Assembly: GCF_001194135.2 (NCBI RefSeq)
Contig: NC_068981.1
Coordinates: 81,699,396-81,763,395 of the forward strand
Length of the DNA stretch: 64,000 nt
Source: Octopus bimaculoides
Lineage: Eukaryota
Direction: 5' to 3'
Part shown: positions 1 through 33,359 of the stretch, piece by piece
Position numbering within the stretch: the stretch's first letter is position 1
Layout of the letters: each line of letters opens with the position of its first letter
Made by a program: the position numbers and the translations under genes
The notes under the pieces: generated by a model
Told to the model about the DNA's origin: nothing
Database searches by the model: none
The model's input: the letters and a program-made list of their open reading frames with translations, nothing else

Positions 1-81
1 GATACGCACAACGTAATTTATTATATAAACAATATATGCGTATAAATTACGATTAAACCGGATGAAATATGTCACAGGGAA

Positions 82-322: not shown

Positions 323-463
323 GTATAATATAATATTTGGGACAATGAAAATTATGAAACTATAAATAGCATATCAGTTCTTTCATTAGAAGTTTATTTG
401 AAGCTTTAAGAAACTATTGACATACGGAATTGTTCATTGATATTTTATTTTGTTCTCTTGCAG

Positions 464-704
464 ATATTTTGTGGAAAGTAAATGGTGTATGTTTGAATAT
501 AACTTAACTAAAATGGAATATATTCATACCGAAAGAAATATAGTAATTATTGTGGTACTGGAGCAGGTACCACACAGATAGCTGCCATTACCAATTCTTG
601 AACAGATAAAGAATCAGAGTTACATTGAATTTCCAAAAGAAAATGCGATTGCTCAAGAAATGTTCTGGAAAAATCTAAAACATCCTTTACAGCTAAAAGA
701 CTGA
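464..704 (+). pseudogene. TLR: Toll-like receptor terminal exon (C-terminal half of TIR) with an in-frame stop
   Basis: Acceptor TTCTCTTGCAG ends at 463. The exon reads A+YFVESKWCMFEYNLTKMEYIHTERNIVIIVVLEQVPHR*LPLPILEQIKNQSYIEFPKENAIAQEMFWKNLKHPLQLKD*, with TIR motifs SxWCxFE and FWxxL. TAG at 579-581, terminal TGA at 702-704. Not in the ORF track. Confidence 0.88.
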
Positions 705-1147
705 TGTATTTAAATTTGCAATAAGTGCAATTTACAGTCATCAAGAAAAATGCTTATAATTTAATAAGGTAGGCAATAAATTATTTTAAACTTTGAAATT
801 GTTATTTATGACTATTAAAATACTGGAATGCATATGAAAGTTAATTTACACAAGAATTAATAAAGATTACTTTAAGTGTGGAACGATAAATGTGAGTATC
901 TTATTAAAATGTACAAGTTATACTTTATGGACTAAAACAAATCAGCTAATTTAATTAATTACTACAGATGTATACCAACAATAATGATGCAGTATATTGA
1001 TATGGATTAAGCCAATACAAATTTAATTAATGTAAAGTCTTTAATCTATGTGCTGAATTTGGTGTTCTGGTAGCGAGGTAAACATAATGTATATGCAGAA
1101 CTAGTGATAAGATTTCCTGCTGATGTAAACTCTGAATAAGAGAAACA

Positions 1148-1192
<45 letters not shown>

Positions 1193-1505
1193 NNNNNNNN
1201 NNNNNNNNNNNNNNNNNNNNNNNNNNNNNNNNNNNNNNNNNNNNNNNNNNNNNNNNNNNNNNNNNNNNNNNNNNNNNNNNNNNNNNNNNNNNNNNNNNNN
1301 NNNNNNNNNNNNNNNNNNNNNNNNNNNNNNNNNNNNNNNNNNNNNNNNNNNNNNNNNNNNNNNNNNNNNNNNNNNNNNNNNNNNNNNNNNNNNNNNNNNN
1401 NNNNNNNNNNNNNNNNNNNNNNNNNNNNNNNNNNNNNNNNNNNNNNNNNNNNNNNNNNNNNNNNNNNNNNNNNNNNNNNNNNNNNNNNNNNNNNNNNNNN
1501 NNNNN

Positions 1506-1536
<31 letters not shown>

Positions 1537-1987
1537 TGTGTGTGTGTGTGTGTTAAAATAGCAACATTAAAAAAAATCGTTACATCGATGCATTTGTCCT
1601 TGATTTTTCGAGTGGCTGAAAATGATTGTCAGCACCAAAATAGAAATTTGTCGAACTGATATATTATAATAATGACTCAATAGCCAGCGATGTGGCAAAA
1701 AGCCGGCGGGCAAAGAATAAGTTACCTATTTGCGACAGGAGCCGTGTTTGTAACGAATAATAATTAGCACATCCGATCTAAATTGGATTTGACGATTAGA
1801 AGGCCTTAAATTTCCTGTAAACACTCGGAGATACAAATCTCGTGTTCATGAAACGTGCTCATTAAACACCGACTATATCGGCTGCCCAAATGAGAGTCTG
1901 CACCGGTGGATGGCATTAATTGCGAATCATCAGCGATATCCAACCTTTTCTCCATATAAGTGTAGTTTATAATATATTCAGTGATAT

Positions 1988-2106
1988 AGGCGCAGGCGTG
2001 GCTGTGTGGTAAGAAGCTTCGGCAAGTGTCTTCTAGTATAGCCGACCTCGGACCGACCAAAGCCTTGTAAGTGGATTCGGTTGACGGAAACTGAAAGAAG
2101 GCCGTC

Positions 2107-2197
<91 letters not shown>

Positions 2198-2392
2198 TTC
2201 CCCCACCATCGCTTGACAACCGATGTTGGTGTGTTTATGTCTCCGAAACTTAGCGGTTCGGCAAAAGGGAGCAATAGAATAAGTACTGGGCTTACAAAGA
2301 ATAAGTCCTGGGGTCGATTCACTCGACTAAAGACGGTGCTTCAGTATGGCCACAGTCAAATGGCTGAAACAACAAAAAGAGTAAAAGAGTAT
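1988..2392 (+). mobile_element. tRNA-derived SINE with internal (TG)n, octopus type
   Basis: Head GGCGCAGGCGTGGCTGTGTGGTAAGAAGC, central (TG)n, tail ...ATGGCCACAGTCAAATGGCTGAAACAACAAAAAGAGTAAAAGAG. Related pieces at about 30843-30900, 52600-53031, 55930-56120 and 62130-62180. Confidence 0.75.
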
Positions 2393-2489
2393 ACTTAATA
2401 TGTTTAGTAAAACCTTAACAATAGTTACTGACACTGTATAAGATTCCAATGACAAGCGTGGAAAGGACGGAGCGGAAGGTAAATAAATG

Positions 2490-3068
2490 GGATCTTTTTT
2501 AAAACGGGGGCCACATTTTTCATTAATGTTTTACGTAGTGTTTTTGGTACGGAAAGACTTTCAAACTTCGTATACTTATCTATTTTGTGTTATAGAACAG
2601 AAAAATATTTTTGTATTCGAATTTATTTCATGTAAAAAAATTGTCTTATTTCGATAATTTCAACCAATCACTGACGTCCATTCAGTCGATATACATTAAG
2701 TGCCGACTACATAAACAAACGATTCTTCGTTTTATTTGCTTTTTTCATTTTAAATTTGCTTTAACCCTAACCCTAACCCTAACCCTAGGGTTAGGGTTAG
2801 GGTTAGAATTAGGGTTAGGGTTAGGATTAATTGTTTCAGAATCGTTTGTTTATGTAGTCGGCACTTAATGTATATCGGCTGAATGGACGTCAGTGATTGG
2901 TTGAAATTACAGAAATACGACAACTTTAACATGGAATAATTTATGGATTTCTTTTTTTTTAAAGAAGACTAAGAGAAAAAGATGTTTTATATGACACATT
3001 CTACCAGTGTTCCAAGTTTCAAAGTGTTTCGTTAATGAAAAATGTAGCCCCCGTTTTAAAAAAGATCC
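2490..3068. mobile_element. 579-bp MITE with about 37-bp TIRs, 8-bp TSD, nested 71-bp inverted repeat and telomeric-repeat core
   Basis: TIRs GGATCTTTTTTAAAACGGGGGCCACATTTTTCATTAA and TTAATGAAAAATGTAGCCCCCGTTTTAAAAAAGATCC. TSD AATAAATG at 2482-2489 and 3069-3076. Inner inverted repeat 2655-2725 / 2839-2909 (one mismatch). Confidence 0.9.
2762..2825. repeat. Interstitial telomeric repeat, (CCCTAA)n-CCCTAGGG-(TTAGGG)n palindrome
   Basis: Read directly; palindrome centre CCCTAGGG at 2783-2790. Confidence 0.95.
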
Positions 3069-3290
3069 AATAAATGCCTCCGAAGGCGGTTAGGTGTCCG
3101 CCCTCCTAAGCTTCACGTCAAAAAGCGTGTACATAAGATCCGGACAACCACGACTATCCCTGTGAGTGACTACTATAAGTAAACTGTTATCTCTCAATCA
3201 TAATCTAGTTGATATTTTGATGTTTCAAAAAAGGATTTTTGTTGGGTAGGATATTTTATTTTACATCCTGCATATGTATTATGTACTTGC

Positions 3291-3344
<54 letters not shown>

Positions 3345-3646
3345 GTATGTGTGCGTGTATGTGAGAGAAAGAGACACACAGAGAGACAGAGAGAAACAGA
3401 AAGATAGTGTGTGTGTGTGTGTGTGTAGTCTTTTAGTGTAGAAGTGGACATATTTTCATATGTAACTGCGTATGGTTTGATATAAATCGACTGTCAGAAG
3501 CAAGCACTTTTAATTTTCTGATTGACATATAAGTACTTCAACATTTTAAGGATTGCCTTCTCCATTTTGCTTTTAGTATGCCAGCTCTTCTTCAAACTTA
3601 TATATACAGAAAGAGTTGATCAGATAGCATGAATAGATATATATAA

Positions 3647-3695
<49 letters not shown>

Positions 3696-3697
<2 letters not shown>

Positions 3698-4235
3698 TAT
3701 ATATAACGATGACCACTAAAGTGGACATTTAATGTGCTAGAAATAGATCCTAGTAATAAATCGATATTAATTAATATCTGATTTTTTACCCTATGTTTTA
3801 ATTTGATTAACCATAACCAAGTTCTCAAAGTGGATATATGCGACGAAGTAACTATTTTCTGCAGACATATTCCCAGAATTAGCGCGCCAAAATGAAGACT
3901 TTTGATTTTTACCATTAAGTTATAATTAGCAGAACCATATACACGTTCATATACACGTTTGCCTCTGGGGGTGAACAACTTGTATAAGGTTCTGAGAATT
4001 ATATTTTCCTTACAGTTCACGCTGAAGAGAAGCAGATATTCGGTATGAGTGTTGATTTCGAAACCCTTCCGTGAATAATAATGTTTTATTTATGTAATTT
4101 TCACTGTCTTGCCCGCATACGTTTTGGTATTTCGCTGAATTTCTTTTGAGAACCATTGGGTCTTAGTAGACACAACATGTGATCTACTTCTAGCACATTA
4201 AATGTCCACTTTAGTGGTCAACGATATAAATAAAC
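3696..4235. repeat. About 50-bp inverted-repeat-bounded element containing a degenerate hammerhead-like motif (possibly Penelope pLTR-derived)
   Basis: GACCACTAAAGTGGACATTTAATGTGCTAGAA (3711-) is inverted at about 4189-4220. Segment 3753-3805 is repeated at about 4311-4362. CTGAAGA...CGAAAC at 4022-4064. Confidence 0.55.
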
Positions 4236-4488
4236 ATATACTTTAATCCCCTAAGATCTCAGATATTTTTTCTGAATCTCTCTGATTCTTTAAATGTGCT
4301 AGCTTCCTGGTAATAAATCGATATTAATTAATATCTGATTTTTTACCCTATGTTTTAATTTATATATATATATATATATATATAGTTCAAAAAAACAATA
4401 ACAAAAAAACAAAAAATCAACAAAGTGAGGACGTGATATGGATAGTATTATTGGACGCTCAGGAAAGGAAAGAGAGTATGTATGTATG

Positions 4489-5015
4489 TATCTTTTATAT
4501 AAAGGTCAATGTTTGTGTGTTCGTGTGTTATAAACTCGAAAACTACTGAACCGATTCTAATGAAATTTGGAACACAAAATCCAAGCCTATGGAGAAGAGT
4601 AATGCCGTATGTTTCATACAATTTTGAGGGGGCATAAAGTGGTGGAGGCAGAAACCACCGTGAAAATTCATATGCTTCGGATTTTGATGAAATTTGAACC
4701 ATAGGTATTAGAAATAAATTTTAAAATATACCCCAATTTTCCATTTCTTTAGATGATACTAAGTCTCTCTAAAGGAGGCTTAACCCCCAAATTTTAGTCA
4801 TTTTTCATGGACCAAAATTACTGAATAGATCCTTTTGACAATACAGTTCTATATTTAAGAGATGAGGAATTATTTACATTATTTACATTTGACGGATATT
4901 TGTCCTCGTCTTGTTTGTTGTTAACACAACGTTTCGGCTGGTATACCCTCCAGCCTTCATCAGGTGTCTTGGGGAAATTTCGAACCTAGGTTCTTATTCC
5001 TAAGGTATTTTTCGA

Positions 5016-5057
<42 letters not shown>

Positions 5058-5995
5058 CCTCATCGTCATCATCCTTATGATATCTGAAACTTAGATTCAA
5101 TGCATTAGGGCGGGTATAATGCAGTAGAACACCCCATGAAAATTCATAAATTTCCGATGTTGAAATTTCAACCATAGGTAATTGACACAAATCAAGAAGT
5201 ATTCCTAAAGTTTCCGCTTCTCATGAGGATTCTAATGGGGGCATTAACTCCCAAATTTTAGTCATTTTTTATGATCCAAAAAAGGTCAAAATTATTGAAT
5301 GAATCTGTATGAAATTTGGAATTTATGTTCTATTCATAGGGGCAAATGTAATGCAGTATATGTTTGAAAGTGAGGGGGCATAAATGAGGCCATAAGCCCC
5401 ATGGAAATTCATATATTTTTGCTATGAGGGTAGGGAAACTGACTGTTTATTGTGATCGTTTGTCTTTTGGTTTCCTCTACCTTTGCTCTCTTTTACAAAC
5501 CAAGTGAACATTCATATATTTCCGATTTCAAAGAAATTTGAAAATAGATATAAGACACAAGTTAAAAAAGATTCCCAGCAATTCATCTTTTCTAGTTGAC
5601 TTTAAGACCCCTCTAATAGGGGCCTTAACTCCAACATTTTAGAGCTCCATCTGCTCCATCTGCTCCATTTGACAAGAGCAAAAGCCTTTGAATGGTTTTA
5701 TACGATTATGATTTTAAAATCTGGGCATAAAGATGAGTAGTATGGGATAAATATGTCATGATTAGAATTTTTGTTAGGGTGTGTAAAGAGGGAAAGAACA
5801 CCCATTAAAATTTCCTATCTTCATCTTGATGAAATTCGAATCATAGGTGTCCAGTTCATTAGAGAAAATATAAAACAAAAGTCTAATTCTTCAATTCCAT
5901 GTGACACGGGCAACGAGGGGGATCTTTAAGACTTTTGAATATTACTCTATATAATTAATAGAACCGTGTGCACGTGTTTTCATTCGTTGGGGACA
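4489..5995 (+). mobile_element. Degenerate non-autonomous repeat, Helitron/HINE-like core with internal subrepeats
   Basis: Start TATCTTTTATATAAAGG...CTCGAAAACTACTGAACCGATTCTAATGAAATTTGG resembles non-autonomous Helitron cores. GAAAATTCATA and GATGAAATT motifs recur. Boundaries are uncertain. Confidence 0.3.
4923..4968 (-). ncRNA. Minimal type I hammerhead ribozyme motif (Penelope/retrozyme type)
   Basis: Minus strand: GACAC-CTGATGA-A-GGCTGG-AGGGTATA-CCAGCC-GAAAC-GT-T-GTGTT. Stem I GACAC/GTGTT, 6-bp stem II, palindromic ACGT stem III. Confidence 0.7.
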
Positions 5996-6121
5996 GCTAG
6001 CACACGGTTCTGTTGGATTATACCTCTATGGCAGTCTGTACTGAGGAGAAACAGAAATTTTCGGTAAGAAAGTATTGATTTCGAACCATGGTCTACAGAT
6101 AACCTATTTATTTCTCTAATT

Positions 6122-6350
6122 GGATCTATTTTAAAACGGGGTCGCCAGTATTTTCTTAACGAAACACTAACGAAACACTTTGAAACTTGGGACACTGGTA
6201 GAATGTGTCATATAAAACATCTTTTACTCTTAGTCTTCTTAACAAAAAAAAAAAGGAATTCGCAAGTTGTCGTATTTCTGTAATTTCAACCAATCACTGA
6301 CGTCTATTCAGCTGAATAGAGTTACTGCTGGGCGGTCATAAAAATGTTAT
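6122..6350 (-). mobile_element. MITE end fragment, inverted near-identical copy of 82-322
   Basis: GGATCTATTTTAAAACGGGG...GGGCGGTCATAAAAATGTTAT is the reverse complement of 82-322, including the shared variants GAATTC and CAGCAGTAAC. Confidence 0.85.
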
Positions 6351-7135
6351 ACTCCCAGAGGTACTCGATGTACTGATTATGTACACACATTTTGGTTAAA
6401 CTCGTGCGACTCAACTTACTGCACTTTATTGTGCAGTAGATTTTGTAATTCTGTTCGCATAAATTTACATTGTAACAAAAATACATGCCTAAATTCTAAC
6501 TCTTCCAGTTTTCTAGAATGTGCAAAGCATTAGCTTTACTTTTGTGAATTAAGAAAATACTATCTTTATGTTTTACTGTATATATTTTCACGTAATTCTT
6601 AATTGTAATACAACACATCCATCGGAAACAATTCTAAGAGAAATCTATTCATAGCTTTCGGGTAGACATCATTTTTGTGCTGTGGAGTTCTGGTGTTCTG
6701 ATGATAGCATGAGAATGCAACATAAAGCAGGCTATGAGGGAAACATGGATTTGCCTATTCAACAATATCCTTGAGGTACTGTCTCTGGGACAATGTTGAT
6801 AATCATAGAAAAAAGACAGGCTCACTTGCAATTGAAGGCGCTTCATATGAAATAACAAGTTTGATGGAGATGAAGGGAAATTGAAGTGAAATGCATGGAA
6901 TGAAATTATCTCTCTGGGCACAGTCAGTTATAATAGAGACTTCTATCGTATGAAACAAGAGTTTTGACAGTCTGCATTATACCGGCAACTTTGATGCATT
7001 TAAGTTCCGTAGTAACATAGACATAAGCATGTCTAGATATGCAACTAAATGCATGAGAATACATGCATAAAACAAAACACATAAATCTGCACATATACAT
7101 ACATACATACATGTACGCACACCTATGTATATAAT

Positions 7136-7173
<38 letters not shown>

Positions 7174-7179
7174 TGTTTG

Positions 7180-7422
7180 TTGGCACTGAGTCGCTTACGA
7201 CGTCGAAGGTTCCAGTTGATCTAATCAACGGAACAGGCTGCTCGTGAAATTAACGTGAGCACTCCACAGACACGTGTACCCTTAATGTAGTTCTCGGGGA
7301 TATTCAGCGTGACACAGTGTGACAAGGCTGACCCTTTGAATTACAGGTACAACAGAAGAAACAGGAAGAAAGAGTGAGAGAAAGTTGTGGTGGAAGAGTA
7401 CAGCAGGGTTCGCCACCATACC
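7180..7422 (-). mobile_element. tRNA-derived SINE, 3' part (same family as 41711-42070)
   Basis: GTTGGCACT...CGACGTCGA.GGTTCCAGTTGATC...CAGCAGGGTTCGCCACCAT is shared with 41720-41940; truncated by an N gap. Confidence 0.7.
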
Positions 7423-7709
7423 NNNNNNNNNNNNNNNNNNNNNNNNNNNNNNNNNNNNNNNNNNNNNNNNNNNNNNNNNNNNNNNNNNNNNNNNNNNNNN
7501 NNNNNNNNNNNNNNNNNNNNNNNNNNNNNNNNNNNNNNNNNNNNNNNNNNNNNNNNNNNNNNNNNNNNNNNNNNNNNNNNNNNNNNNNNNNNNNNNNNNN
7601 NNNNNNNNNNNNNNNNNNNNNNNNNNNNNNNNNNNNNNNNNNNNNNNNNNNNNNNNNNNNNNNNNNNNNNNNNNNNNNNNNNNNNNNNNNNNNNNNNNNN
7701 NNNNNNNNN

Positions 7710-7955
7710 CTAATAAACGATTTCCTTGCTGCTGTTATAACTTTAAATTCTTCTTTAGTGAGGCCTGCTTTTTTATGGAAGAACCACATTGCCTTGTTTA
7801 GTACTATTGGGTTAATTGATCTATAAAAGTTAGCTATATCAAATTGGATAAATTTAGTTTCTTCTTTATGTTCAATTGATCTAAACCAATTAATTACTTG
7901 GTCTGTATTAGACCATAATTCTAACTTTAACTTAGTGGTTATTGTGGGTAGATAG

Positions 7956-7960
<5 letters not shown>
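7710..7960 (-). mobile_element. Penelope-like element reverse transcriptase fragment
   Basis: WSNTDQVINWFRSIEHKEETKFIQFDIANFYRSI matches the PLE RT pattern W.NT..VI.WF......F..FDI..FYPSI. Confidence 0.7.
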
Positions 7961-7997
<37 letters not shown>

Positions 7998-8598
7998 TGC
8001 ATAGATATGGATAATATTATAGAGTATATTGAACATGGGATAGATAGTACAGTTTGACGCAGCAGACATTTTCGTAGCTCACACTTACTCACCCTTACAC
8101 AACTGCTACTCTGTTACAACGTTTAGTCCCCCTACATATCCTTTTTTAAACACGGACCCACGGAAACGTTAAGTGATGTTAATGCTTCTAATTATTACCG
8201 AGTTAGTTAAAGCATGCATTCAAATTTTTTCGTTTATGTAAAACAAATTACGCTAAAGAAAGAAATATATATTATAGTTAGTACTCAACACATGTGTTGA
8301 ATGTGAGGATATCCGTTAGTAACCAATAATACAAATAATGCAAATAATTGCTTTGAACGAGGGGCTGCTGAAAAGTTCCTGGCTGTGGGTAAAAGGAAAT
8401 ACAAGAGGATAAGTAAATTATGATTATATTCAACATATTCCCCTCTCAGATTCACACAATTATTGCTGCGAGCCTTCAGTTTTTCTAAGCCCTGTAAAAG
8501 AACTCGGAAGATTGGGCCTTTAACCAGGTCTTTCGTGGTACCCTTAAAACCGTGTGTGTGTGTGTGTGGATGCTATAATTTTACTGAATGTTACTTAC

Positions 8599-9382
8599 CT
8601 TCTTAATAAAATAATACATTTTCGTCTAGATTGGATTGCTGATAATATATTTTCTGTTATCAATTTTCCCACAGGGAAGTCCCGGTGATGAATATTCAAA
8701 CGTAAGCTTTCTTTTCCTTCCAATTCTGGAATCAAATAATTTAATGCAAAATCTCGATTTTCGTCGGCATAAATCACAAATGCATCATAAATATATTCAT
8801 CGGGAGTGAGTTGTTTGTAGGAATACTTTTCTCTGATCATGTAATATAAATATCGTAGCTTCCATCTAAAATGGTAAATGAGTGAGGCAACTAGAAATAT
8901 AATCAGTATTACAACACCAAAACTTATCGCAATTATTATCCCTATCAAGGCTGAACAAGTGTGATTCAGAAAGCTTACGATCCTAACAAGCTGATTTCCT
9001 TTCAACTTCCACACTGTTCCGTTAGGATGAGTACATTTCGAGTGGATTATTTTCAAACGAACTGAAGTGCGTAGTTGTGGAGCCTTGTGAGAAATCTTAT
9101 CTGTGCACAACCACATTTCAATTTATTGTTTTGTAAGTTGACAGTGAATTTATGGTGGTGAGATATTTTTTCAAGAGTATTAAAAGTGTTTTCTGACAGT
9201 TCTTGTAAAATGTTTTTAGATAAATCTAAATATGATAAATTTAACATATGACTAATCTTTATATCAAATGATTCTAATAAATTGTTGCGTAAATTTAAGA
9301 TTCTGAGATTTTTCAGCTGTAACAAACTGTTATTTGATAAATATTGAATGTGGTTATTTGAAAGATATAATTCTTCGAGGCT
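8599..9382 (-). pseudogene. TLR: TLR first coding exon, 3' copy: last LRRs, frameshifted LRR-CT, TM helix, N-terminal half of TIR
   Basis: The LRR frame ends CGCAQIRFLTRLHNYALQFV* at 9053, while SKCTHPNGT-TM (ALIGIIIAISFGVVILIIFLVASLIY)-TIR (YDAFVIY, HHRDFPVG, QSRRKCIILL) is in another frame. Phase-2 donor AG|GTAAGT at 8599/8598. Confidence 0.85.
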
Positions 9383-9392
9383 NNNNNNNNNN

Positions 9393-11116
9393 TTTAATTT
9401 ATTGTTTTGTATGTTGACAGTGAGTTTATGGTATTCAGATATATTTTCAATAGCATTCAAAGTGTTTTCTGACAGTTCCTGTAAAATGTTTTTAGATAAA
9501 TCTAAATATGATAAATTTAACATATGACTAATCTTTACATCAAATGATTCTAATAAATTGTTGCGCAAATTTAAGATTCTGAGATTTTTCAGCTGTAACA
9601 AACTGTTGTTTGATAAATATTGAATGTGGTTATTTGAAAGATATAATTCTTCGAGGCTGGTTAAATTTAGAAAAGCTTTACTGAAACCTTCTTCGGCAAC
9701 TTGCCCTGAAATTCCTATTACGTTATTTTCGATATTCAAAAGTCGCAGACCAGTGAAAAATGTGAAGAATTCGTTACTGATATTATTGCATTGGTTGTGA
9801 CTTAAATCCAGTATTTGTAATTGTTCTAAGCCCCGGACTGGGCCACTCCATGGACAAAATATATTATTTGTTGCATTAATTACTCTTATTGCATTTGCAT
9901 CTTTTATGTGGAATGGTGGTATGGGAATTTTATAGTGGCAACCTTGTAGTAAGAGTGTTTTAAGAGATTTGGAGATTGTAAAACTGTAAGTAATATCCCT
10001 ATTGAATAATTTGCTACGAATAAATGGTAGCTCTCTATATGATATTGTCGTGCTAATGTCAATTAATTTAATGTTGGGTAAAGCCTTAATTTGAAAGATA
10101 TATTCTCCGTATGTAAATCTGTTGTTTCTCAAATAAGCGTATTCCAATGTGCTGGGTAAGGAGGGAATGCTATTCCAAGAAAGTAATTCAATATGATCTG
10201 AATTTAAAACAATTTTCTTCAATCTAGTTTTCTGTAAAGAACTTGTGAAATGTTCGGTAATAACAATGCCCGTTCCTACATTTAATTTTATATTACTAAA
10301 ATATAAAGTTTGGAATTCACTTGGGTTTTTTAGATACCTCAAAGTCAGTGTAATTCTATACAGCAGAATTTGATTGTTAAATGAAATGCGTAGGAGTTGC
10401 AGATGTTCAAACTGTGCGAATGCCTCGGTGTTAATTACATCTAAATGGCAATAATCTAAATTCAAATGGGTTATTCTGGGAACATTTTTAAATGCATGTT
10501 TTGTAATATATCTAATAACGGAACTGTTTCTTTTTGAGGCAAAATTAATATATTTTAATTTTGTCAAATTCTTATATCCTGCACCAAACATGAAGTACTG
10601 ACCACCTGATATGTATAAATATTCCAGTGCAGTTAAATGAGATATAGTTCTATCAATAAAGTTCGTGTTTCTGTACACAGTGTTACCTCGTAGTTTCAGA
10701 ATTTTCACTTCAGTTAAATTTCGGAAAAGATTTATAGGAAATGAAGAATAATTAATAGCTAATCTGTTGTATTCCAACGACAGTTCTCTCAAAGACCACA
10801 AACCTTGAAAGGTGTTTGGCAGCAAATATTCAAGAAGATTATCGTCAACTTTTAGCACCTCTAATAAGTTTAAATGCTTAATAATATCAGGAGGGATTCT
10901 TTTAATGTGGTTTCGACTTAAATCTAATGATGTCGTATTTTCTGGAAAATAACTGGGTATTTGAGTTAGGTTTTCGTCAGTACAAGTTACTGTACAGTGT
11001 TGAAATTTGTCTTCGGTACAGTGGCAAACAGCTGGACAATCTGTCTGACAATTTGCAGTCACTGAAGTAAGTAGTTTCAAGAAATAACCAAATATAATAA
11101 TGAATATGTGTAACAT
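9393..11116 (-). CDS. TLR: TLR first coding exon, 5' copy: signal peptide, LRR-NT and many LRRs (single-cysteine-cluster type); open up to the N gap
   Basis: ATG at 11116, hydrophobic leader, CQTDCPAVCHC...CTVTC cap, and repeated LxxLxLxxN motifs with no internal Cys cluster. Confidence 0.92.
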
Positions 11117-22500: not shown

Positions 22501-24501
22501 TGTTATATCGCACGTTCGGATGACCTCTACTCAACTACTATTTCTTTATTTGTTACTACGGCCACAACACAGAGGGGACATTACAAGGACAAACACAACA
22601 CCACAATGGGGACAAAAAACATGAAACGAATGAGAATGAGATGTTATATGAAAATGAAGAAATGAAATGGCTGCATCGGCCCCATTCCCATGCAGTACCA
22701 TTTGAACGTTTATATACACTATTTAAAATCGTTCAATTTTTGCGTTGTTTTTTTTCTTAATCATCTTTTTTTCCTCTCTTTTTTTTTCCATGAAATACTT
22801 TTACTTTTTTTTTCTCTTTTTTGTTCCTTTTTTCTTTGTTTTTCTTTTTTTTCAACAAAACAATTTTACTTACTTTTTTTCTTTTTAATACCTCTTGAAA
22901 GGCGCCAAGTCTTTTTGTTCAACTACTGGTGGCAGGTGTTCGAACTCTACCAACACATCGGGCTGGTCAATCCCGTCTCCGCACATGTCTTTCAGTCTCT
23001 TGTATGTGTCTTTGTCGATCACAATGGCCTTCACGTTTTCGGAATATATACCCGTGGGTAAACTCACTCTTATGATATGTTTGAATTTTAAAATTTTTCT
23101 TTCCGTCTCTTTGCTTTTTGCATATGTTACGAAATTCCATTTATTTTTTCCTCTTCTTGGTTTTTCTCTTTTCTTCTTCCACTTCTGGTACCTTTTCCTT
23201 TTCTATCTCCACTTTGAACAGTCTCTCCATTTCACCCTCATACAGTTGCACCCCTGAATCTTTTTTCTTCGCTGGGATAACCGGCGTCTTTAACACTGTT
23301 TCCTCCTTCTGTATCTCCTTCTCGTACACTTTTTCAATTAATTTTTCACTTTCTCTCTCCACCACCCTTTTGTCTGCCTTCCTTCTGGTCGCAGCTTTCA
23401 TTTCCACCTCTTCTTTCTTCTTTTTCTGGTTCCCTGGCGGCGCGCTTGCTCTTCCACTTCTTTTTCTTTCTACCAACGTGAATCCCTCCTCCGCTGTTTC
23501 TTCTTCCGTCTCCAGCTGTACTACTTGGTTCGCACTCTCCCGCTTCTCCGTCTGTTCTCTCTGTGGGCACCTCACCTTCATGTGGCCTTTCTCCCCACAT
23601 GCAAAACATATCGGCGGCCTGCCCTCCACCATCACTCTCAATCTCAAGTCGTCGGGCAACACTATCTCCTCAACAATTCAATTTAAGTCTTCTATTTTGC
23701 CTGGATAGTGAGCTCAATTCCGTATCCCCAGTAATTAATTCTTTGTGTCCTTGTGGCTTTCAATATTTTGGCCCCATCCTTCATGTTGAATATTATGGCT
23801 GTCATCAGCCACGTTTCTTTTAGTTCTGGGGGTACTTTGCCTATTCGTACTCTGGCCACACGTTTGCCATAGAACGAAGGCAAAAGCACCCACTCCTCCG
23901 ATCTTATTGCCTCCGTCGAGTGTTTAATTGCTTCTTCCTCTGTCGCAAAGCGCACCTCCACGGTGGCATACTTCCTTCCTCTTGTTATAAATGTTAGATT
24001 TTTTATGCTTTTTAAACATTCTTCAATTTCCACAACTGTCGCAACCTCTATCTTTCTCGTTGCAATTTTCATTGTCTTGAATACAACTGTTCTTTTGGTT
24101 ACATTGCTTGTCAGTTCTGCAGGTGGCGTTAATTTCAACGTATCTCCAACTCTCTCCAGCAACCTCTCACATTCCTTCATTTTCTTTGGTTCTACCTTAA
24201 TTTCAATTATTTCCAATGTTTCCTCTTCTATTCCTTTTCCAGTTGTGGTCGCATAACTGTGGCCACCCACTGGTATTTTCTCTATTTTTACCCCAATGGG
24301 AAGAGAAAAAAAAACAACAACTCCAACAATTCGAACAGTAATAATTAACAAACAAATATTTAATGTTATGACTCACGATAAAAACACTCCGTTATCAACA
24401 ACTCTTCAACTCATAGACCTCTGCTCCGACGTCTAGACACCTCCCTCTATATCTACGTATTGGGCTAGCCTATTTCATCGTTTGGGGACGTCGACACAAC
24501 A
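22501..24501 (-). mobile_element. 2001-bp insertion with TGT...ACA termini encoding only a frameshifted Tx1/L1-like ORF1 (RRM-like region, CCHC knuckle, charged tail)
   Basis: Ends TGTTATATCGCACGT and (reverse complement) TGTTGTGTCGACGT. GATAG flanks both sides. ORFs 24351-23692 and 23662-23141 include CFACGEKGHMKVRC. The insertion is absent from the paralogous site at about 40700. Confidence 0.7.
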
Positions 24502-27250
24502 GATAGATAACTTCGATATGTTTCGGCCAGATTGGCCCAGAGCATGTCTAACTTAATAGCAGTGCTTGATAGGATCTGTTAAATCATCTTTTGGTCAAGC
24601 TTTGTGTTATCATTGCCTATTCGAGTAAGGAGTTGTTGATTGAGATGTATCCAGGTATAGGTGGCTTGTCTGTTATTCCTTGAAGAAATTTGTCCAGGAT
24701 TCATTTGAAGGTGTTGGTATCTTTTTCCTCTTTGATTTGTTTTGGGATAATGTTAAAATAGAGCGGGACCTGTCGAGGACAAGAAATTGTGTTGTAATGA
24801 ATTTATGTACTGTGATCCTGAATAGTGTAGGAGTCATATACCATGTGGTCCCAGCCTTGGATAAATTCTGAATCGAATGTTAAGTTCTTATGCAGGTGAT
24901 ATATTCTCCACGTTGTCCAAAAGATGTAGCGCTCATAACAGCGTTGGAGTAAATAAGTAAATAAAGTTTCAATGTTTTACAGTGGCCCCAATAATCAAAA
25001 TCAGAAATGCCCTTAATTTTTTAGTGAATGCTTTCTGGGGTTGCTCAAGTCTTGTAATGCTTTGCTTTATGTGGGGAGACCAATTCTTAAGTCACTTAAT
25101 ACTATAGGATGCTGTGAGTGAAGAGAATGTGTTGGGTTAAACGTAGTCTTTTTTCTTAAATGCATCAATTCAAATTTCCTCTTATTTAACCACATTTTGT
25201 TTTTGTCTGCCAGTTGGCTTGCAGCATGTAGATCCGTCTGGAATTCAGTTCGGTCTTGATAATTTTCAGGAGCTTGGTGTGATCTGCGAATATGTTTACC
25301 CTATTCGATGACGTTTGAGCTGTTGTCTATATAGACTATAAGCAGAAATGGACCCAAAACAATCCCCTGAGCGACACCACTGGTGATTCTTTCTGGGCAG
25401 GAATGAACTCCACCCATCACAACATGTATTTTGTTCACCAGGAAGTAATAAATCCAATCTGGCAGTTTTCCAAGGGTTCCAATATTTGACAATTTTCACA
25501 GGCGGTTATTGCGGTGGACTCTCTCGAACGCTTTACTGAAGTCAAAATATTTGAGATCAGAGTTCGAACATGATCCCAAGGCTTTGAGGACATCGTCGAT
25601 GTGCTGTGACGGCCGTATTAGACAGTCTCTGCCGCAGCAGAAGTCATGCTGGATAGAAGGTTTTGACTTTCCAGGAAGCCAGTTATCATTAATTTCATCA
25701 CTTTCAATCACTTCGTTGATATGGGAGGTGAGGGAGTTTAGACGATAGTTGACAGCGAGAGACCTTTTTCCCTTTTTGAAGACCGTCAAGACAAATTGAG
25801 ATAAGAACTTCTGCGGTATATAGCCTGAGTCTTAAAAATTTTTCCCGATGTTGGTACGTGGGATTGCAAGTTGGTGGCCACATTCATTTAGGATACTAGC
25901 GAGGAATCTATCAGGGCCTACATTTATTGCTGCTGTGATGTCTGAGGCAGTAAAAGGTATGTCCGAGATAATATGTTGAAGATCAACTTCGTTCACATTC
26001 CTTGCATCAATAGCTGTGGGATCACTAAAGACAGAGCAGTATTGTTCCTGCAGTAGTTCGGCCATTTTTTTAGCGTCATGCTGGAGACAGCTGTTATCAT
26101 CAGTCAGTGGACCAACGGGTGAGACAGCGGTTCTATGCTTGTTGACATATTAATAAAACACTTTCGGATCCTGTTTGATTCTTTTGATTACCCAGTTTTC
26201 CTCTCCAGCGCATTGATTGTCGTTGTAGGTTTTACATACTGATCTGCAAATTCTGTTTTCCCAACTCAAGCCTGCTTAATGCTGTTCAGTCTGGACGTTG
26301 TTGGTGGTAGTATTTTAATTGGTTGATTTTTCTTAGTCTTTTGATTTTCCCAATGAGTGTCTTTTTCCCTCTTGGGAGCCTATTTCTGTTCATGCTAGCG
26401 AGTTTCGTGCGTATTTTGAGCATGTATGAGAGACAATGTTCTCAAAGCGCAGCCATATTATATCAATATGAGAGGAACTGTAAAAAGGAATTTTCTCATT
26501 GGTTAGTCATTTAATCAGGTGATATATTGTACTCGTTTATATTACTTGATGTTATGATTTTCCCATAGTTCTGATGGATGGGATTTTTCGTTGGTCCGTG
26601 TTAGGAGATGGAATATGGTTTAATTTGTATTTATTGCACTTCCCTTTTGCTGTTTATTTTTCCTTCGTCTTCAGCCTTTCAGATGGTGATAACTACGTTC
26701 CAGATTCAGGCATATCTTTAGAGAGAAAGAATTTTGACAGAGGCTAGGATGAAACAACGTACACCTGTTGCCTTTTGTGCATCCGTGTTTAGCGTCAGGG
26801 ACACGGGCTCTATATTTGGGAGAGTAACTGGAATCAGTTTTTTTTCCATTTATACTATATGGATAAGTGCACTTAATAAGTCTACAACAAAGGTAGACAC
26901 TACAACATAAGGGAGTATAAGAGAAAGGGCGGTGTCCCTTGTTGATGGTGCTGCTGGGGCCAAATTAACAAATACCTTGAAACGGATAACGGAAGGTTTT
27001 TTTGAAATGGAGGAGGGTTGTCTATATTGGCATGTGGGTTAGAGGAAGAACCGTTGGTCAATGTCCCTGATGTAGTAGTAGTAATACTAGACTGTTGCTG
27101 TTGAAGTGGATTTTGACCTGTCGTAATGGTAGTAGTCTGTTGTAGTGAATACCGTCAAGGAGACGAGATAGTGAAACGAAAGCAGGCGGTATTTGCTGCT
27201 GAATAACGGTTGCTGAGGTGACCTATGACGTCTTACCACAGAGTACGCGG
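24502..27250 (-). mobile_element. CR1/L2-group LINE, degenerate ORF2 with (TATC)n tail
   Basis: AELLQEQYCSVFSDP, VFKKGKRS...NYRL.SLTSHI, YFDFSKAFERV, GVAQGIVLGPFLLIVYIDN, and C-terminal GPALFNIIPKQI...LDKFL..I.DKP. Confidence 0.8.
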
Positions 27251-27322
27251 TACTCTTTTTCTCTATATACATATACATCTAATTATTCATACATAATTAA
27301 ATTTCAAATACATATATGTACC

Positions 27323-27363
<41 letters not shown>

Positions 27364-27373
27364 NNNNNNNNNN

Positions 27374-27417
<44 letters not shown>

Positions 27418-30400: not shown

Positions 30401-31596
30401 GAAAAAATTTCGTAGTCGCTCTTTCTCCGCAACTTATCAAGCCTCCGAGTTTGTTTACAAATATTATATATATATATAAGCTGTAATTTTTTTAATAATT
30501 ATATATCGTTAATATAACAATACATAAAAACGGGCTAGAGTTGAAGTGCTCAGCATGATCTAGAATTCACATTATTGTAAGAATGGATACATAAGGGTGG
30601 AATACCACAGGAACAATACCATATATCCAACGCAAGATTTAATATATGTGTGTGTGTGTGTGTGTGTGTTCAATTCCTTCAAAAATCAATAAATAAATAT
30701 ATAGTTTTCAGTCTCTAAAATGTGTAAAAAGTAAGGTAAAATAAAGTAAACAGGCATATGCAACGATATAAACTTTAGAAATATCATGAATGTTTAAAAT
30801 ATTTATTTTAAAATATTTATAAACATGCATAGTTTCCAAGTTACTCTTTTACTCTTTTACTTGTTTCAGTCATTTGACTGCGGCCATGCTGGAGCACCGG
30901 TCATAAAGTGGCAGAGGTTTCGCATCCATAAAGGGCTTAGCCCCATGAATGACTAGTTAGCGTCTAAAACCGAAGGTCATATAGTTCTTCAAACCTTGGA
31001 CGTAGGAATCCGTTATTGATCGGACCACTGTATTTATATANNNNNNNNNNNNNNNNNNNNNNNNNNNNNNNNNNNNNNNNNNNNNNNNNNNNNNNNNNNN
31101 NNNNNNNNNNNNNNNNNNNNNNNNNNNNNNNNNNNNNNNTCTCTCTCTCTCACTCTCGTTGTTCACGCGTGACCATCTTTCTTTTCCTGCACGGACGTTC
31201 AAGAGAACGTACGTTTTTTTTCTCTCACTGTTCTATCTTTTTTCTTTTCAAAACAAAAAATTGTTTCTCCCAGCGTTCACTATTTTCCGCTCGTTCTGGT
31301 CTAACGAACTTCCATGTTTGTTTTCGTTCAGTTTCCTTGTATGTCTCCACTGTCATGCTTTTGTTTCCAACTTTGAGCGTCCATAAATCCTAAATTTTAT
31401 TTTAGAATTTATGGGAGCAACTGTCTTTTAGAACTCATATTGTCGTTGAATGCTCGAAATGAGCTGGAGATAGACAGTCGACAACTGATGAAGGGCCCTT
31501 TCTCACTGTTTACTTGTCCTGCTTTCCATTTTTCCTCGTTGTTTACGAATCTTATGTTATTTGCACCGTTGGTAACGTCTTGTACCCATATATGCA

Positions 31597-31634
<38 letters not shown>

Positions 31635-32690
31635 CAGGGAACACGGTTGGATAGCTGGTCTTATTGTTAACGATTACTACATTGAGTTTGGTTCCTAAAA
31701 CCGGGATTCGATCATTATCTATTGAAATGTAATTTCATTTTGAGGATCTGGGTATGCATGTTCAGAAACCGCTTTGGGCTTTTGCAATTCCGCAAAGGTC
31801 TAGGGTAAAATTGCAGTAGAATTTCTTGAGATTTCTAGTATACTAGTCGACAAGTGTTTTGAATTATAAAATCTTTACTCTCGCTGACGCCTGGAAACTG
31901 ACCATTGCCCCTGTTTGAAGTAAAATATTTGCAATTTGGGCTGCTGAGATATTTGCATTAAGGGGCACTCTAATTTTCGAAGAAAGATGTTGTTTTTCTA
32001 CTTGTCTCAAAATAACAGTTTCTTTGGGACATGCATTCAACTTATTAGCAAGTGTAACTTTTGTAATAACCAGCAGAGTTTGCCACAAATTACCAGGGGT
32101 CATTTAAGGTGCGATCAAGAGCCTCACAAGAATGTCTATAAAACATTCTGCTTGAGAATCTAGAGTGATGTTATATCATGGATAATATACAGGTTTTGTT
32201 TGAAATTTCAACAGATTATAAAAAATTCGTGATATATGGATAAAAAAATGAATGGGCTCTGTCAAATGTAAAATCTTTATTTGTTACAGATTAGAAGTGG
32301 GAAAAACAATGCAAAAACGGGTTCCTCGATTCCAAATATATTACAGAAAGAAAATTACGAACAAGTGTTTATATTAAATTGATAATACACAATCGCAAGC
32401 AATTAGCACATAAAACAAATTATACAATGATCAACGAAATATTGATGTTGAAAATATACAAATGACTGTGACTGCATACAAAGAAACAACATGATTTTTG
32501 TTAATTAAAGTTAAAGGTTGTAATAAATATTTACTGAACAGTATAGCAATTTTCTGTAAGATTTCAGTCTCTCTCACACATACATAAATTCATAATTTTG
32601 ATGCACACGTATAAAGAAGAAAATTACAAAATATTCTTTCAGTGATACCGTTATAAATTTGACATATAATTTAAATCGATCATACTCTTA

Positions 32691-32928
32691 TTAACCTTCT
32701 CGTATAGACATTTTTAGATTTTTCCAGAAAACATCACTTGTCGTCGCGTTCTCCGTCGGAAAACATATATAACTCTGCATTTTGACTTGATGCTTTAATT
32801 GCAAAGGTAGAACGTCTACAGGAAGTTCTTCGAGCATTATGACAATTACCAAATCTCTTTCAGCGTGAACACATTCCATTTTAGCCATGTTATATTCAAA
32901 CATACACCACTCACTTGACAAAAAGCTC
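32691..32928 (-). CDS. TLR: TLR terminal exon (C-terminal half of TIR), intact; partner first exon not found
   Basis: Acceptor GTTTAATTTCAG|G, then SFLSSEWCMFEYNMAKMECVHAERDLVIVIMLEELPVDVLPLQLKHQVKMQSYICFPTENATTSDVFWKNLKMSIREG*. Same phase and position as the 464-704 exon; 40 of 78 aligned residues are identical by manual count. Confidence 0.9.
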
Positions 32929-33359
32929 CTGAAATTAAACGAAATTATACATTAATATAACTTAAAAGTACGAAACAATTATTGTCATAATTTGCTGGTA
33001 AAAACTGGGGGTGTGAAAGGAGAAAGAAAGAGTGAGAGGGAATGAGAGGGAGAGAGAGAGAGAAAGAGAGAAAGAAGATTAAAAAGAAAAAGATAAAGTA
33101 AGGAACAAAGAAAGAAAAAGAAAGAAAGAAAGAAATAGTATGGAGTGGGTTCTTCATCACCGTAGCTCACCTTATACGGTAGTATCCATGTATAAAATGG
33201 TTAGAGGGAATCGGGATATTCTTTGTGGTATATCCGACGCTGTGCTCTGCCACGGTTACAGACCACAATTCAAAAGCGATCTATTGAAATATACACTGCA
33301 GTAAGTGGGAGCGTTTAAGTTGTCTAAAAGTCTTCGAACCACAAAAATATGGCGAAACT

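What the first reader, a model, noticed from the sequence alone, without database searches (positions are those of the whole stretch)
464..32928. TLR cluster with an intron splitting the TIR domain; one first exon and two terminal exons, none in cis-spliceable order
Seen: the first exon (minus) ends in a phase-2 donor in mid-TIR (AG|GTAAGT, 8599). Two terminal TIR exons with matching phase-2 acceptors exist, and both restore Arg (AG+A, AG+G) before the xFxxSxWC motif. One is downstream but on the opposite strand (464-704, +). The other is on the same strand but 21 kb upstream (32928-32691). They are about 51% identical in amino acids, so the intron position predates an old duplication. Inference: a modular TLR locus in which ectodomain exons and TIR-completing exons have been rearranged independently, or could be paired in more than one way. 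Many deuterostome and molluscan TLRs encode TIR without an intron, so the architecture itself is notable. Draft scaffolding error is a serious alternative.
Basis: partly seen in the sequence, partly recalled or inferred. Interest (0 to 1): 0.7.

Follow-up and report, generated by a model that had tools for sequence, protein, structure and literature searches.

The report
Octopus TLR cluster: flipped exon, broken assembly
The window is part of an Octopus bimaculoides cluster of ordinary two-exon Toll-like receptor genes; the "unspliceable" exon order comes from one damaged gene copy whose last exon lies in a flipped 5.8-kb segment, plus a neighbouring gene whose first exon falls in assembly gaps, not from exons that are mixed and matched.

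Summary
The "modular locus" interpretation is not supported.

- **Source.** The window is Octopus bimaculoides chromosome CM046601.1, in a gap-rich cluster of two TLR types.
- **Pairing.** A-type first exons use t1-type terminal exons, and B-type first exons use t2-type ones. Seven gene copies in four octopod species have both exons in cis on one strand, 2.7-11 kb apart. All share the same phase-2 intron in the TIR domain.
- **t1 (464-704).** It is the window gene's own terminal exon. It lies in a 5.8-kb segment bounded by 99-100% identical inverted repeats (81-322 and 6122-6350). That segment is flipped relative to paralogs. The small contig is not mis-oriented, because the gap at 1193-1505 is only a (TG)n run. 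Reads must decide whether the flip is real or an assembler path error.
t1 has an in-frame TAG (579-581). The first exon has a 1-nt deletion (about 9077) and an unmerged 266-bp overlap at the 10-N gap.
- **t2 (32928-32691).** It is the last exon of the upstream B-type gene. That gene's first exon is missing at the gaps 38443-39667.
- **TIR intron.** It is shared by both gene types in Octopus and Argonauta, and absent from the closest scallop and abalone homologues.

Interest is low.

The parts
9393..11116 (-). A1 first exon, 5' part: signal peptide, LRRNT and LRRs, on contig 9393-12460
   Evidence: An ORF with Pfam LRRNT and LRR_8 (E 1e-43). It is 62% identical to the intact Argonauta orthologue and 88% to paralogue A2.
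9115..9660 (-). Two 266-bp near-identical copies flanking the 10-N gap at 9383-9392. Most likely an unmerged contig overlap, not a real LRR duplication.
   Evidence: There are 14 mismatches in 266 bp, 11 of them in the last 66 bp. Argonauta and A2 have one copy. The flanks of the other 10-N gaps also overlap.
8599..9382 (-). A1 first exon, 3' part: last LRRs, LRRCT, transmembrane segment and the N-terminal half of TIR. It ends in the phase-2 donor AG|GTAAGT.
   Evidence: The donor has the same position and phase in 8 first exons.
9053..9080 (-). Frameshift in LRRCT: 1-nt deletion at about 9076/9077 (CAC-AAC versus CACAAAG in homologues), giving a premature TGA at 9055-9053
   Evidence: Nucleotide alignment with O. 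vulgaris A and B, O. sinensis A and Argonauta A. Two overlapping ORFs in different frames.
6344..7019 (-). Segment X: A1 intron sequence that in paralogues lies immediately upstream of the terminal-exon acceptor region
   Evidence: 85% identical to L007 19240-19921. In A2 this abuts the terminal-exon segment (L007 19914-20627). 87% identical to the t1' contig.
6122..6350 (-). Inverted-repeat arm R, at the right-hand breakpoint of the flipped segment
   Evidence: Arms 6264-6350 (100%, 87 nt) and 6122-6251 (99%, 130 nt) are complementary to 81-167 and 193-322.
81..322 (+). Inverted-repeat arm R', at the left-hand breakpoint, ending 141 bp upstream of the t1 acceptor
   Evidence: GTATAA flanks X|R and R'|Y where A2 has a single copy.
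323..6121 (+). Flipped 5.8-kb segment: 141 bp of intron, terminal exon t1, the 3' flank, the (TG)n gap at 1193-1505 and downstream sequence
   Evidence: Window 324-1027 (+) matches L007 19914-20627 in the orientation opposite to X. Collinearity continues across the gap into 1536-1640 in t1', tA2 and O. sinensis.
464..704 (+). t1, the A-type terminal exon (C-terminal half of TIR). Acceptor cag|A, phase 2; in-frame TAG at 579-581.
   Evidence: 73% amino-acid identity to the Argonauta A terminal exon and 94-95% to t1' and tA2.
32691..32928 (-). t2, the B-type terminal exon. Intact, acceptor cag|G, phase 2. It belongs to the B-type gene upstream of A1.
   Evidence: 90% amino-acid identity to the O. 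vulgaris B terminal exon and 86-87% to tB1 and tB2.
31623..36802 (-). 3' part of the B-type gene: intron from about 0.95 kb after its first exon, then t2 and the 3' flank. Collinear with the gap-free O. vulgaris B gene.
   Evidence: Window 36802-36214, 35789-33634 and 33641-31623 match L003 38390-38978, 43044-45176 and 45229-47229 at 88-93%.
38443..39667 (.). Assembly break (556 N, a 569-bp contig, then exactly 100 N) where the first exon of the t2 gene is expected
   Evidence: Collinearity with O. vulgaris jumps from L003 15469 to 38390 across this stretch. No first-exon similarity was found by tblastn.
45185..56351 (-). Syntenic anchor: sequence collinear with the 3' part of the SOWAH/ankyrin gene that lies upstream of the TLR cluster in O. 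vulgaris and Argonauta
   Evidence: 88-94% identity to L003 1-9164. Gene lists.

Best explanation
**Setting.** The window covers part of a head-to-tail array of ordinary two-exon Toll-like receptor genes in Octopus bimaculoides (chromosome CM046601.1, 81.70-81.76 Mb). It lies downstream of a SOWAH-like gene.

**Gene structure.**
- There are two old paralogue types. A-type first exons splice to t1-type terminal exons, and B-type first exons splice to t2-type ones.
- Each gene has one long first exon (signal peptide, LRRs, LRRCT, transmembrane segment and the first half of TIR).
- A phase-2 intron of 2.7-11 kb, usually full of transposons, follows.
- A roughly 240-bp terminal exon completes TIR.

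**The window gene A1.**
- A1 has its own terminal exon, t1, about 8 kb away.
- t1 sits in a 5.8-kb segment bounded by near-identical ~240-bp inverted repeats. In the assembly this segment is flipped, so exon 1 cannot be spliced to it.
- A1 also carries a 1-nt deletion in LRRCT and a CAG-to-TAG change in t1. It is most likely a recently inactivated copy. The orthologous A copy in O. vulgaris and O. sinensis is already reduced to a truncated fragment.

**t2.** It is the last exon of the B-type gene that precedes A1 in the array. That gene's first exon is absent because the assembly breaks at 38443-39667, exactly where it should be.

**Shown versus inferred.**
- Shown: the exon-type pairing in cis in other copies and species, the breakpoints and repeats, the lesions, and the collinearity.
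- Inferred: that the flip exists in the animal rather than only in the assembly (about 60:40), that A1 is a pseudogene, and that the missing B first exon is unassembled rather than deleted.
For: **Identity of the locus:**

**Cis-ordered, same-strand pairs with identical intron position and phase**:
- Argonauta A: L001 9149-11419 plus 20658-20898, gap-free and intact.
- O. bimaculoides A2: L007 10001-11968 plus 20054-20290.
- O. bimaculoides B1: L006 47713-49989 plus 52647-52877.
- O. bimaculoides B2: L007 36382-38657 plus 44117-44347.
- O. vulgaris B: L003 35157-37436 plus 45942-46175, gap-free.
- O. sinensis B: L005 9962-12238 plus 23154-23387, gap-free.
- Argonauta B: L010 6001-8097 plus 17089-17328, gap-free.

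**t1 versus t2.** t1 is 73% identical to the Argonauta A terminal exon; t2 is only 49% identical to it.

**The flip.**
- Homology to A2 runs along window 7019-6344 on the minus strand, then resumes at 324-1027 on the plus strand.
- The inverted-repeat arms lie exactly at the two breakpoints.
- Sequence across the 1193-1505 gap is collinear in t1', tA2 and O. sinensis, so contig 1-1192 is correctly oriented relative to contig 1506-7422.

**Lesions:**

**A-type decay in sister species:**

**t2.**
- About 90% collinear with the O. vulgaris B intron, terminal exon and 3' flank.
- Adjacency of its block to the A1-side contig is supported by overlapping flanks at the 10-N gap 27364-27373.
- The orthologue-type 5' half of a B first exon exists as an orphan contig at L006 27769-28695, next to another 100-N join.
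Against: - No reads or transcripts were available. With 87-nt and 130-nt identical stretches in the inverted repeats, an assembler could have taken the wrong exit, so the flip may not exist in the animal.
- Apart from one deletion and one stop codon, A1 is an open 2.5-kb reading frame in an AT-rich genome. The two lesions could therefore be consensus errors from mixed paralogous reads, or heterozygous variants.
- The simple model of two independent repeat insertions followed by recombination predicts a second target-site duplication, which I did not find.
- There are three t1-type terminal exons but only two assembled A-type first exons, and two diverged copies of an upstream block (window 40051-41711 and 20837-25563, 81-87% identical). 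The true copy number and order of the array are therefore not resolved.
- The overlap at gap 27364-27373 is a low-complexity (GT)n run.
Confidence: 0.72

Rival explanations
1. One reading: a modular TLR locus in which ectodomain first exons and TIR-completing terminal exons are shuffled independently, or can be combined in more than one way (alternative pairing or trans-splicing).
For: - Donors and acceptors of both types share one position and phase, so any first exon could formally be joined in frame to any terminal exon.
- Several automated gene models join exons across neighbouring genes.
Against: - In seven copies across four species, each first-exon type is followed in cis by its own terminal-exon type. 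No locus shows a shared terminal exon or a cross-type pair.
- In the TIR part, orthologues are more alike (78-93%) than paralogues (43-72%). The two halves of each TIR have therefore evolved together.
- The window gene is damaged.
- The cross-gene models are read-through chimeras that include transposon ORFs.
Confidence: 0.03
2. A pure assembly artefact for A1. In the animal the 5.8-kb segment is in the gene orientation (exon 1, an intron of roughly 3 kb, then t1), and the frameshift and stop codon are consensus errors. A1 would then be an intact, functional gene.
For: - The inverted repeats share 87-nt and 130-nt identical stretches, long enough to confuse a short-read assembler.
- The region is a patchwork of small contigs. 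It contains unmerged overlaps, and gene-conversion tracts that are 82-97% identical between paralogues.
- Apart from two single-base lesions, the reading frame is open.
Against: - The junctions X-R and R'-Y lie inside N-free sequence, not at gaps.
- Paired reads with ordinary insert sizes span 240 bp.
- Two independent disabling lesions in one copy, plus decay of the orthologous copy in O. vulgaris and O. sinensis, fit real pseudogenisation.
Confidence: 0.22
3. t2 is an orphan: the remnant of a B-type copy whose first exon has really been deleted, or a contig block mis-placed by scaffolding from downstream of the orphan B first-exon half left of the window.
For: - No first exon lies within 31 kb upstream of t2.
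- Collinearity with O. vulgaris skips about 23 kb at 36802-40051.
- The orphan 5' half of a B-type first exon, 89% identical to the same O. vulgaris gene, lies 8.6-9.6 kb left of the window in the wrong order.
- The right side of the t2 block is joined only through gaps.
Against: - t2 keeps an intact 78-codon frame, its acceptor and all conserved TIR residues. That is unexpected for a long-orphaned exon in an AT-rich genome.
- Its left-hand join is a 10-N gap with overlapping flanks.
- The break falls at a 556-N gap and an exactly 100-N gap whose true sizes are unknown.
Confidence: 0.3

Closest known systems
Annotated octopod 'toll-like receptor 4' genes: O. bimaculoides XP_014770880.1 (P0019), O. 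sinensis P0020, O. vulgaris P0021, Argonauta hians Ahia01_000026600 (P0022)
   Same: They have the same domain order (LRRNT, LRRs, one LRRCT, transmembrane segment, TIR). They share the two-coding-exon structure with the phase-2 intron before xFLxSEWC. Their terminal exon is t2-type, 82-90% identical to the window's t2.
   Different: They are the B type, only about 65% identical to the window's first exon. They are complete, and their exons are in cis.
Argonauta hians Ahia01_000022700 (P0001, locus L001), orthologue of the window's A-type gene
   Same: It is 62-63% identical over the whole protein. The donor position is identical, and a t1-type terminal exon lies 9.2 kb downstream. A SOWAH-like gene lies upstream.
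   Different: It is intact and on one strand in gap-free sequence. It has a single copy of the LRRs that appear duplicated at the octopus 10-N gap, and Lys where t1 has a stop codon. The deposited model stops at the donor and misses the terminal exon.
Single-cysteine-cluster TLRs of other molluscs (Argopecten irradians 'TLR4' P0023, Haliotis rubra 'TLR4' P0003)
   Same: They have the same architecture and are the best non-cephalopod matches (29-37% identity).
   Different: The TIR domain is encoded in one exon. Haliotis has the whole ORF in one exon, and Argopecten has residues 12-890 in one exon.
Variable-first-exon clusters such as protocadherin and UGT1A (from general knowledge).
   Same: Several similar first exons lie in one region, with splice sites of compatible phase.
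   Different: Those clusters have many first exons on one strand upstream of one shared set of constant exons. Here every first exon has a private terminal exon of matching type.
Gene-disrupting inversions between inverted repeats, for example the F8 intron-22 inversion in haemophilia A (from general knowledge)
   Same: Near-identical inverted repeats sit at both breakpoints. The flipped segment separates the 3' exon from the rest of the gene.
   Different: The scale is far smaller (5.8 kb, 240-bp repeats). The flip is not confirmed at read level, and it sits in a gene copy that is already damaged.

Membership tests
Toll-like receptor (single-cysteine-cluster type) | Extracellular LRR array with an LRRNT cap and a single LRRCT cap | tested here: met
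   Pfam LRRNT (E 1e-6) and LRR_8 (E 1e-43) on the first exon. The CxC...C LRRCT motif aligns with Argonauta and other copies.
Toll-like receptor (single-cysteine-cluster type) | Single transmembrane segment followed by a cytoplasmic TIR domain | tested here: met
   A hydrophobic stretch, IGIIIAISFGVVILIIFLVASLIY, precedes YDAF. Pfam TIR scores E 1e-13 and 9e-12 only after the first exon is joined to a terminal exon.
Toll-like receptor (single-cysteine-cluster type) | An uninterrupted reading frame that can be spliced in cis (that is, a functional gene) | tested here: not met
   For the window copy A1: a 1-nt deletion in LRRCT, TAG in t1, and t1 on the opposite strand in the assembly. The feature is met in Argonauta A and in the B-type genes.
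Variable-exon / shared-exon cluster (alternative pairing of first and terminal exons) | Several first exons on one strand upstream of shared terminal exon(s) | tested here: not met
   Each first exon has its own terminal exon of matching type 2.7-11 kb downstream, in seven copies.
Variable-exon / shared-exon cluster (alternative pairing of first and terminal exons) | Transcripts that join one terminal exon to different first exons | not testable with these tools
   No RNA-seq or Iso-Seq reads were available. Only automated, partly chimeric gene models were seen.
Inverted-repeat-bounded inversion | Near-identical inverted repeats at both breakpoints | tested here: met
   Arms 81-167/6264-6350 are 100% complementary and arms 193-322/6122-6251 are 99% complementary. 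The core motif occurs only three times in the 64-kb window, all within 1-7422.
Inverted-repeat-bounded inversion | Collinear with un-inverted relatives outside the repeats and inverted between them | tested here: met
   Against paralogue A2, against t1' and against O. sinensis. Only the first few hundred bases inside and outside could be compared, because the paralogue contigs end in gaps.
Inverted-repeat-bounded inversion | Orientation confirmed by reads that span the repeats | not testable with these tools
   No read data were available.

The most novel reading that the evidence does not exclude
The 5.8-kb segment carrying the terminal TIR exon is a real, recurrently flipping (polymorphic) inversion between its near-identical inverted repeats. 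Individual octopus haplotypes would then carry the receptor's last exon either in a spliceable or an unspliceable orientation, giving a germline on/off polymorphism of an innate immune receptor. The 99-100% identity of the arms would be maintained by the same recombination.
Probability: 0.07. Interest if true: 0.5.

Novelty: already known. Interest (0 to 1): 0.2.

Why it matters
**For genome scanning.** This case is a caution. In a short-read, gap-rich assembly of a recently duplicated gene cluster, exons that seem out of order are best explained by three things:
- window edges;
- unassembled paralogous sequence;
- small inversions in decaying gene copies.

**Biological content that remains.**
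- Octopod TLRs of this clade share a lineage-specific phase-2 intron inside the TIR domain. The intron is conserved through an old duplication and is absent from the nearest scallop and abalone homologues.
- The A-type receptor is being lost in the genus Octopus.
- The C-terminal LRRs of the A and B paralogues evolve in concert.

These points matter for anyone counting or annotating cephalopod TLRs. Current public gene models at this locus are truncated or chimeric.

Tried and rejected
1. **Mis-oriented 1.2-kb contig (window 1-1192, gaps on both sides).** This was my first explanation after seeing the Argonauta locus. I rejected it because the sequence beyond the 1193-1505 gap continues the paralogous and orthologous 3' flank in the same orientation.
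2. **LTR-type insertion with direct repeats plus a flipped contig.** Rejected for the same reason. No retroelement ORFs lie between the repeats.
3. **Second target-site duplication.** The two-insertion recombination model predicts one, but I did not find it.
4. **Using the reverse-transcriptase ORF that runs into gap 7423-7709 to confirm orientation of contig 1506-7422.** The ORF does not resume after the gap, so this was not informative.
5. **t1' as an allelic copy of t1.** t1' (L006 29987-30223) is about 9% diverged from both t1 and tA2, so it is a third paralogue.
6. **Hidden first exons upstream of t2.** tblastn at E up to 10 found nothing.
7. **Literature.** The one search made for cephalopod TLRs, and the one paper read, did not mention introns. 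The paper says only that cephalopods have the smallest molluscan TLR repertoires (PMC10279657).
8. **Transcript evidence.** No octopus transcript-derived proteins with the junctions appeared in the two protein searches.
Full report
**Where the window comes from**

The first-exon protein is encoded on Octopus bimaculoides chromosome CM046601.1 (assembly GCA_001194135.2, 199.9 Mb). The window covers 81,699,396-81,763,395 on the plus strand. It contains eleven runs of N. It begins immediately after a gap that is 2489 N long in L006.

**Checking the observation**

- The minus-strand first exon ends AG|GTAAGT, with its last base at 8599.
- t1 begins cag|A at 464 and stops at 702-704.
- t2 begins cag|G at 32928 and stops at 32693-32691.
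- Pfam finds LRRNT and LRR_8 in the first exon. The first-exon TIR half alone scores weakly (E 0.0015). A full TIR domain appears only when a terminal exon is appended (E 1e-13 with t2, 9e-12 with t1).
- t1 and t2 are 53% identical. There is no other first exon in the window.

Three things were missed.
- t1 has an in-frame TAG at 579-581.
- The first exon is two ORFs in different frames. Aligned with four homologous copies, a 1-nt deletion near 9076/9077 explains this. The frame then hits TGA at 9055-9053.
- The first exon spans the 10-N gap at 9383-9392. Its flanks are 266-bp near-duplicates with 14 mismatches. With one copy removed, the protein aligns end to end with the Argonauta orthologue. 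Paralogue A2 also has one copy.

The flanks of the other 10-N gaps in the window also overlap. The overlap is a perfect 54 bp at 16518-16527 and a (GT)n run at 27364-27373. These short gaps therefore look like unmerged contig overlaps.

**Two gene types, each with its own terminal exon**

A profile search returned annotated octopod TLRs. I fetched their loci and mapped all exon types onto them.

- **A type.** This is the window's first exon. It is followed by a t1-type terminal exon on the same strand in:
  - Argonauta hians: L001 9149-11419, then 20658-20898. The locus is gap-free and both exons are intact.
  - O. bimaculoides paralogue A2: L007 10001-11968, then 20054-20290.
- **B type.** These are the genes NCBI names 'toll-like receptor 4'. 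The first exon is followed by a t2-type terminal exon in:
  - O. bimaculoides B1 and B2;
  - O. vulgaris;
  - O. sinensis;
  - Argonauta.

All eight first exons end AG|GTRAGT or AG|GTAAAT at the same codon position. All nine terminal exons start cag|N in phase 2.

The intron is therefore older than the A/B duplication and the Octopus-Argonauta split. It is not general to molluscs. The best abalone homologue is a single exon. The best scallop homologue has residues 12-890 in one exon.

**What happened to t1**

Because contig 1-1192 has gaps on both sides, I first suspected a flipped contig. That is wrong.
- In the paralogues t1' (L006) and tA2 (L007), and in O. sinensis (L005), the terminal exon's 3' flank runs into a TG-rich microsatellite and then into the sequence TTAAAATAGCAACAT...TCCTTGATT.
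- In the window the same sequence resumes at 1554 on the plus strand, right after the gap.
- So 1-1192 and 1506-7422 are correctly joined.

The rearrangement lies inside N-free sequence.
- Homology to the A2 intron runs along the minus strand from 7019 to 6344. It corresponds to L007 19240-19921.
- Homology then resumes at 324-1027 on the plus strand. That corresponds to the adjoining L007 19914-20627.
- Exactly at the two breakpoints sit inverted repeats: 81-322 and 6122-6350. Their arms are 100% (87 nt) and 99% (130 nt) complementary. They differ only by a 16-bp indel, a T-run length and one substitution.
- A GTATAA motif flanks X|R and R'|Y where A2 has one copy.

The simplest reading is a 5.8-kb inversion between inverted repeats, which carries t1 onto the other strand. 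With identical stretches this long, a short-read assembler could also have chosen the wrong exit. I put real versus artefact at about 60:40.

**Is A1 alive?**

A1 carries three things: the frameshift, the stop codon (CAG in both paralogues, AAA in Argonauta) and the flipped exon.

The orthologous, SOWAH-adjacent A copy in O. vulgaris and O. sinensis is reduced. It survives only as a fragment starting near residue 457, with a 16-nt deletion and no t1 nearby. Together these point to loss of this gene in the genus.

The rest of the A1 frame is still open. The lesions are therefore either recent or errors.

**What t2 is**

- Window 36802-31623 is collinear at 88-93% with the gap-free O. vulgaris B gene. 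The match starts about 0.95 kb after that gene's first exon and runs through the terminal exon and 3' flank.
- Further right, window 56351-40051 is collinear with the SOWAH side of the O. vulgaris locus.
- Between these two blocks, at 36802-40051, about 23 kb of the O. vulgaris order is skipped. The skipped part includes the B first exon. The window has there a transposon-like stretch, a 556-N gap, a 569-bp contig and an exactly 100-N gap.
- The block carrying t2 is tied to the A1-side contig by a 10-N gap with overlapping flanks.

So t2 is most simply the last exon of the B-type gene that precedes A1 in a head-to-tail array, and its first exon is lost in the assembly break.

An orphan 5' half of a B-type first exon lies 8.6-9.6 kb left of the window. 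It is 89% identical to the same O. vulgaris gene and ends at another 100-N gap. It may be the missing piece, misplaced.

The array's true copy number is unresolved.
- Three t1-type exons exist, against two assembled A-type first exons.
- Three t2-type exons exist, against two complete B-type first exons plus one half.
- Two diverged copies of an upstream block also exist.

**The modular reading**

Nothing supports exchange of terminal exons between gene types.
- In the TIR region, orthologues are more alike (78-93%) than paralogues (43-72%).
- Every complete copy pairs like with like.
- The public models that cross genes are read-through chimeras, some including transposon ORFs. They are XP_052821640.1 (1558 aa), XP_014770878.1 and the O. 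vulgaris 880-aa model, all of which read through from one TLR gene into the next, and UniProt A0A0L8FLX6, which joins transposon-like ORFs to t2.

**Comparison with what is known**

These are ordinary single-cysteine-cluster TLRs, already present in RefSeq as TLR4-like genes. A published survey reports that cephalopods have the smallest molluscan TLR repertoires. It does not mention introns (PMC10279657).

The TIR-splitting intron is a modest lineage-specific feature. The inverted-repeat-bounded flip resembles, on a small scale, known gene-disrupting inversions such as F8 intron 22 (general knowledge).

**Verdict**

The sequence features are real. The striking arrangement is explained by a damaged copy, an inverted-repeat flip of uncertain reality, and assembly breaks. 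Interest is low.

Noticed in passing
window 9393-10060 (A1 residues ~354-574, the part before the 10-N gap); compared with P0019 and with L001 and L010: Concerted evolution. The C-terminal LRRs are 82-97% identical between A and B paralogues within O. bimaculoides and within Argonauta, but only 54-77% identical between orthologues. The TIR part shows the opposite pattern. In Argonauta the two genes are 4.8 Mb apart. One of the window's contig breaks (the 10-N gap at 9383-9392) falls in this tract.
   Followed up: partly
window 8599-9116 (-); L006 10001-52880; L007 10001-44350; L003 10001-47136: Three independent public gene models (XP_052821640.1, XP_014770878.1 and the O. vulgaris 880-aa model) read through from an A-type first exon into the B-type first exon downstream. 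In two of them the A-type donor at the TIR intron is joined directly to an acceptor five codons upstream of the B-type ATG (…LLRR|HEDIYM, …LLSR|HDDIYM). This could reflect real read-through transcripts or be a shared prediction artefact.
   Followed up: no
L003 23417-24280; L004 10004-10858: The A-type gene of O. vulgaris and O. sinensis survives only as a 5'-truncated fragment starting near residue 457. It has a 16-nt deletion after LVRI and no t1 exon nearby. O. sinensis keeps a t1 remnant 9 kb upstream of another B gene (L005 840-926).
   Followed up: partly
window 16518-16527, 27364-27373, 9383-9392, 39568-39667: The 10-N gaps are unmerged contig overlaps: a perfect 54 bp, a (GT)n run, and 266 bp with 14 mismatches. 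Exactly 100-N gaps (also at L006 28695-28794) look like joins of unknown size between older scaffolds.
   Followed up: partly
window 45185-56351 (-): This stretch is collinear at 88-94% with the 3' part of the O. vulgaris gene carrying SOWAH and ankyrin Pfam domains. The same neighbour precedes the A-type TLR in Argonauta. No long ankyrin ORF lies in this stretch, so it is probably mostly intron and UTR.
   Followed up: partly
window 7710-8092 (-), 15280-15723 (-), 19358-19957 (+), 23141-24351 (-), 47515-47895 (+): Transposon remnants: a reverse-transcriptase-like ORF in the A1 intron, a LINE-type endonuclease, RVT_1, a zinc-knuckle gag-like ORF, and a DDE_3 (Tc1/mariner-type) transposase. The Argonauta intron holds what look like retroelement ORFs (not scanned against Pfam).
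   Followed up: partly
window 16743-18151: Tandem minisatellites with periods of about 120 bp (17481-18151) and about 207 bp (16743-17482). They were seen as ladders of self-hits upstream of A1.
   Followed up: no
window 2615-3068; L003 28176-29020; L004 14688-15538: A third, 86%-identical copy of the breakpoint repeat, with a partial inverted partner, lies inside the flipped segment. Diverged copies occur at the corresponding place in O. vulgaris and O. sinensis. The repeat family is therefore old at this locus, while the two breakpoint copies are nearly identical.
   Followed up: partly
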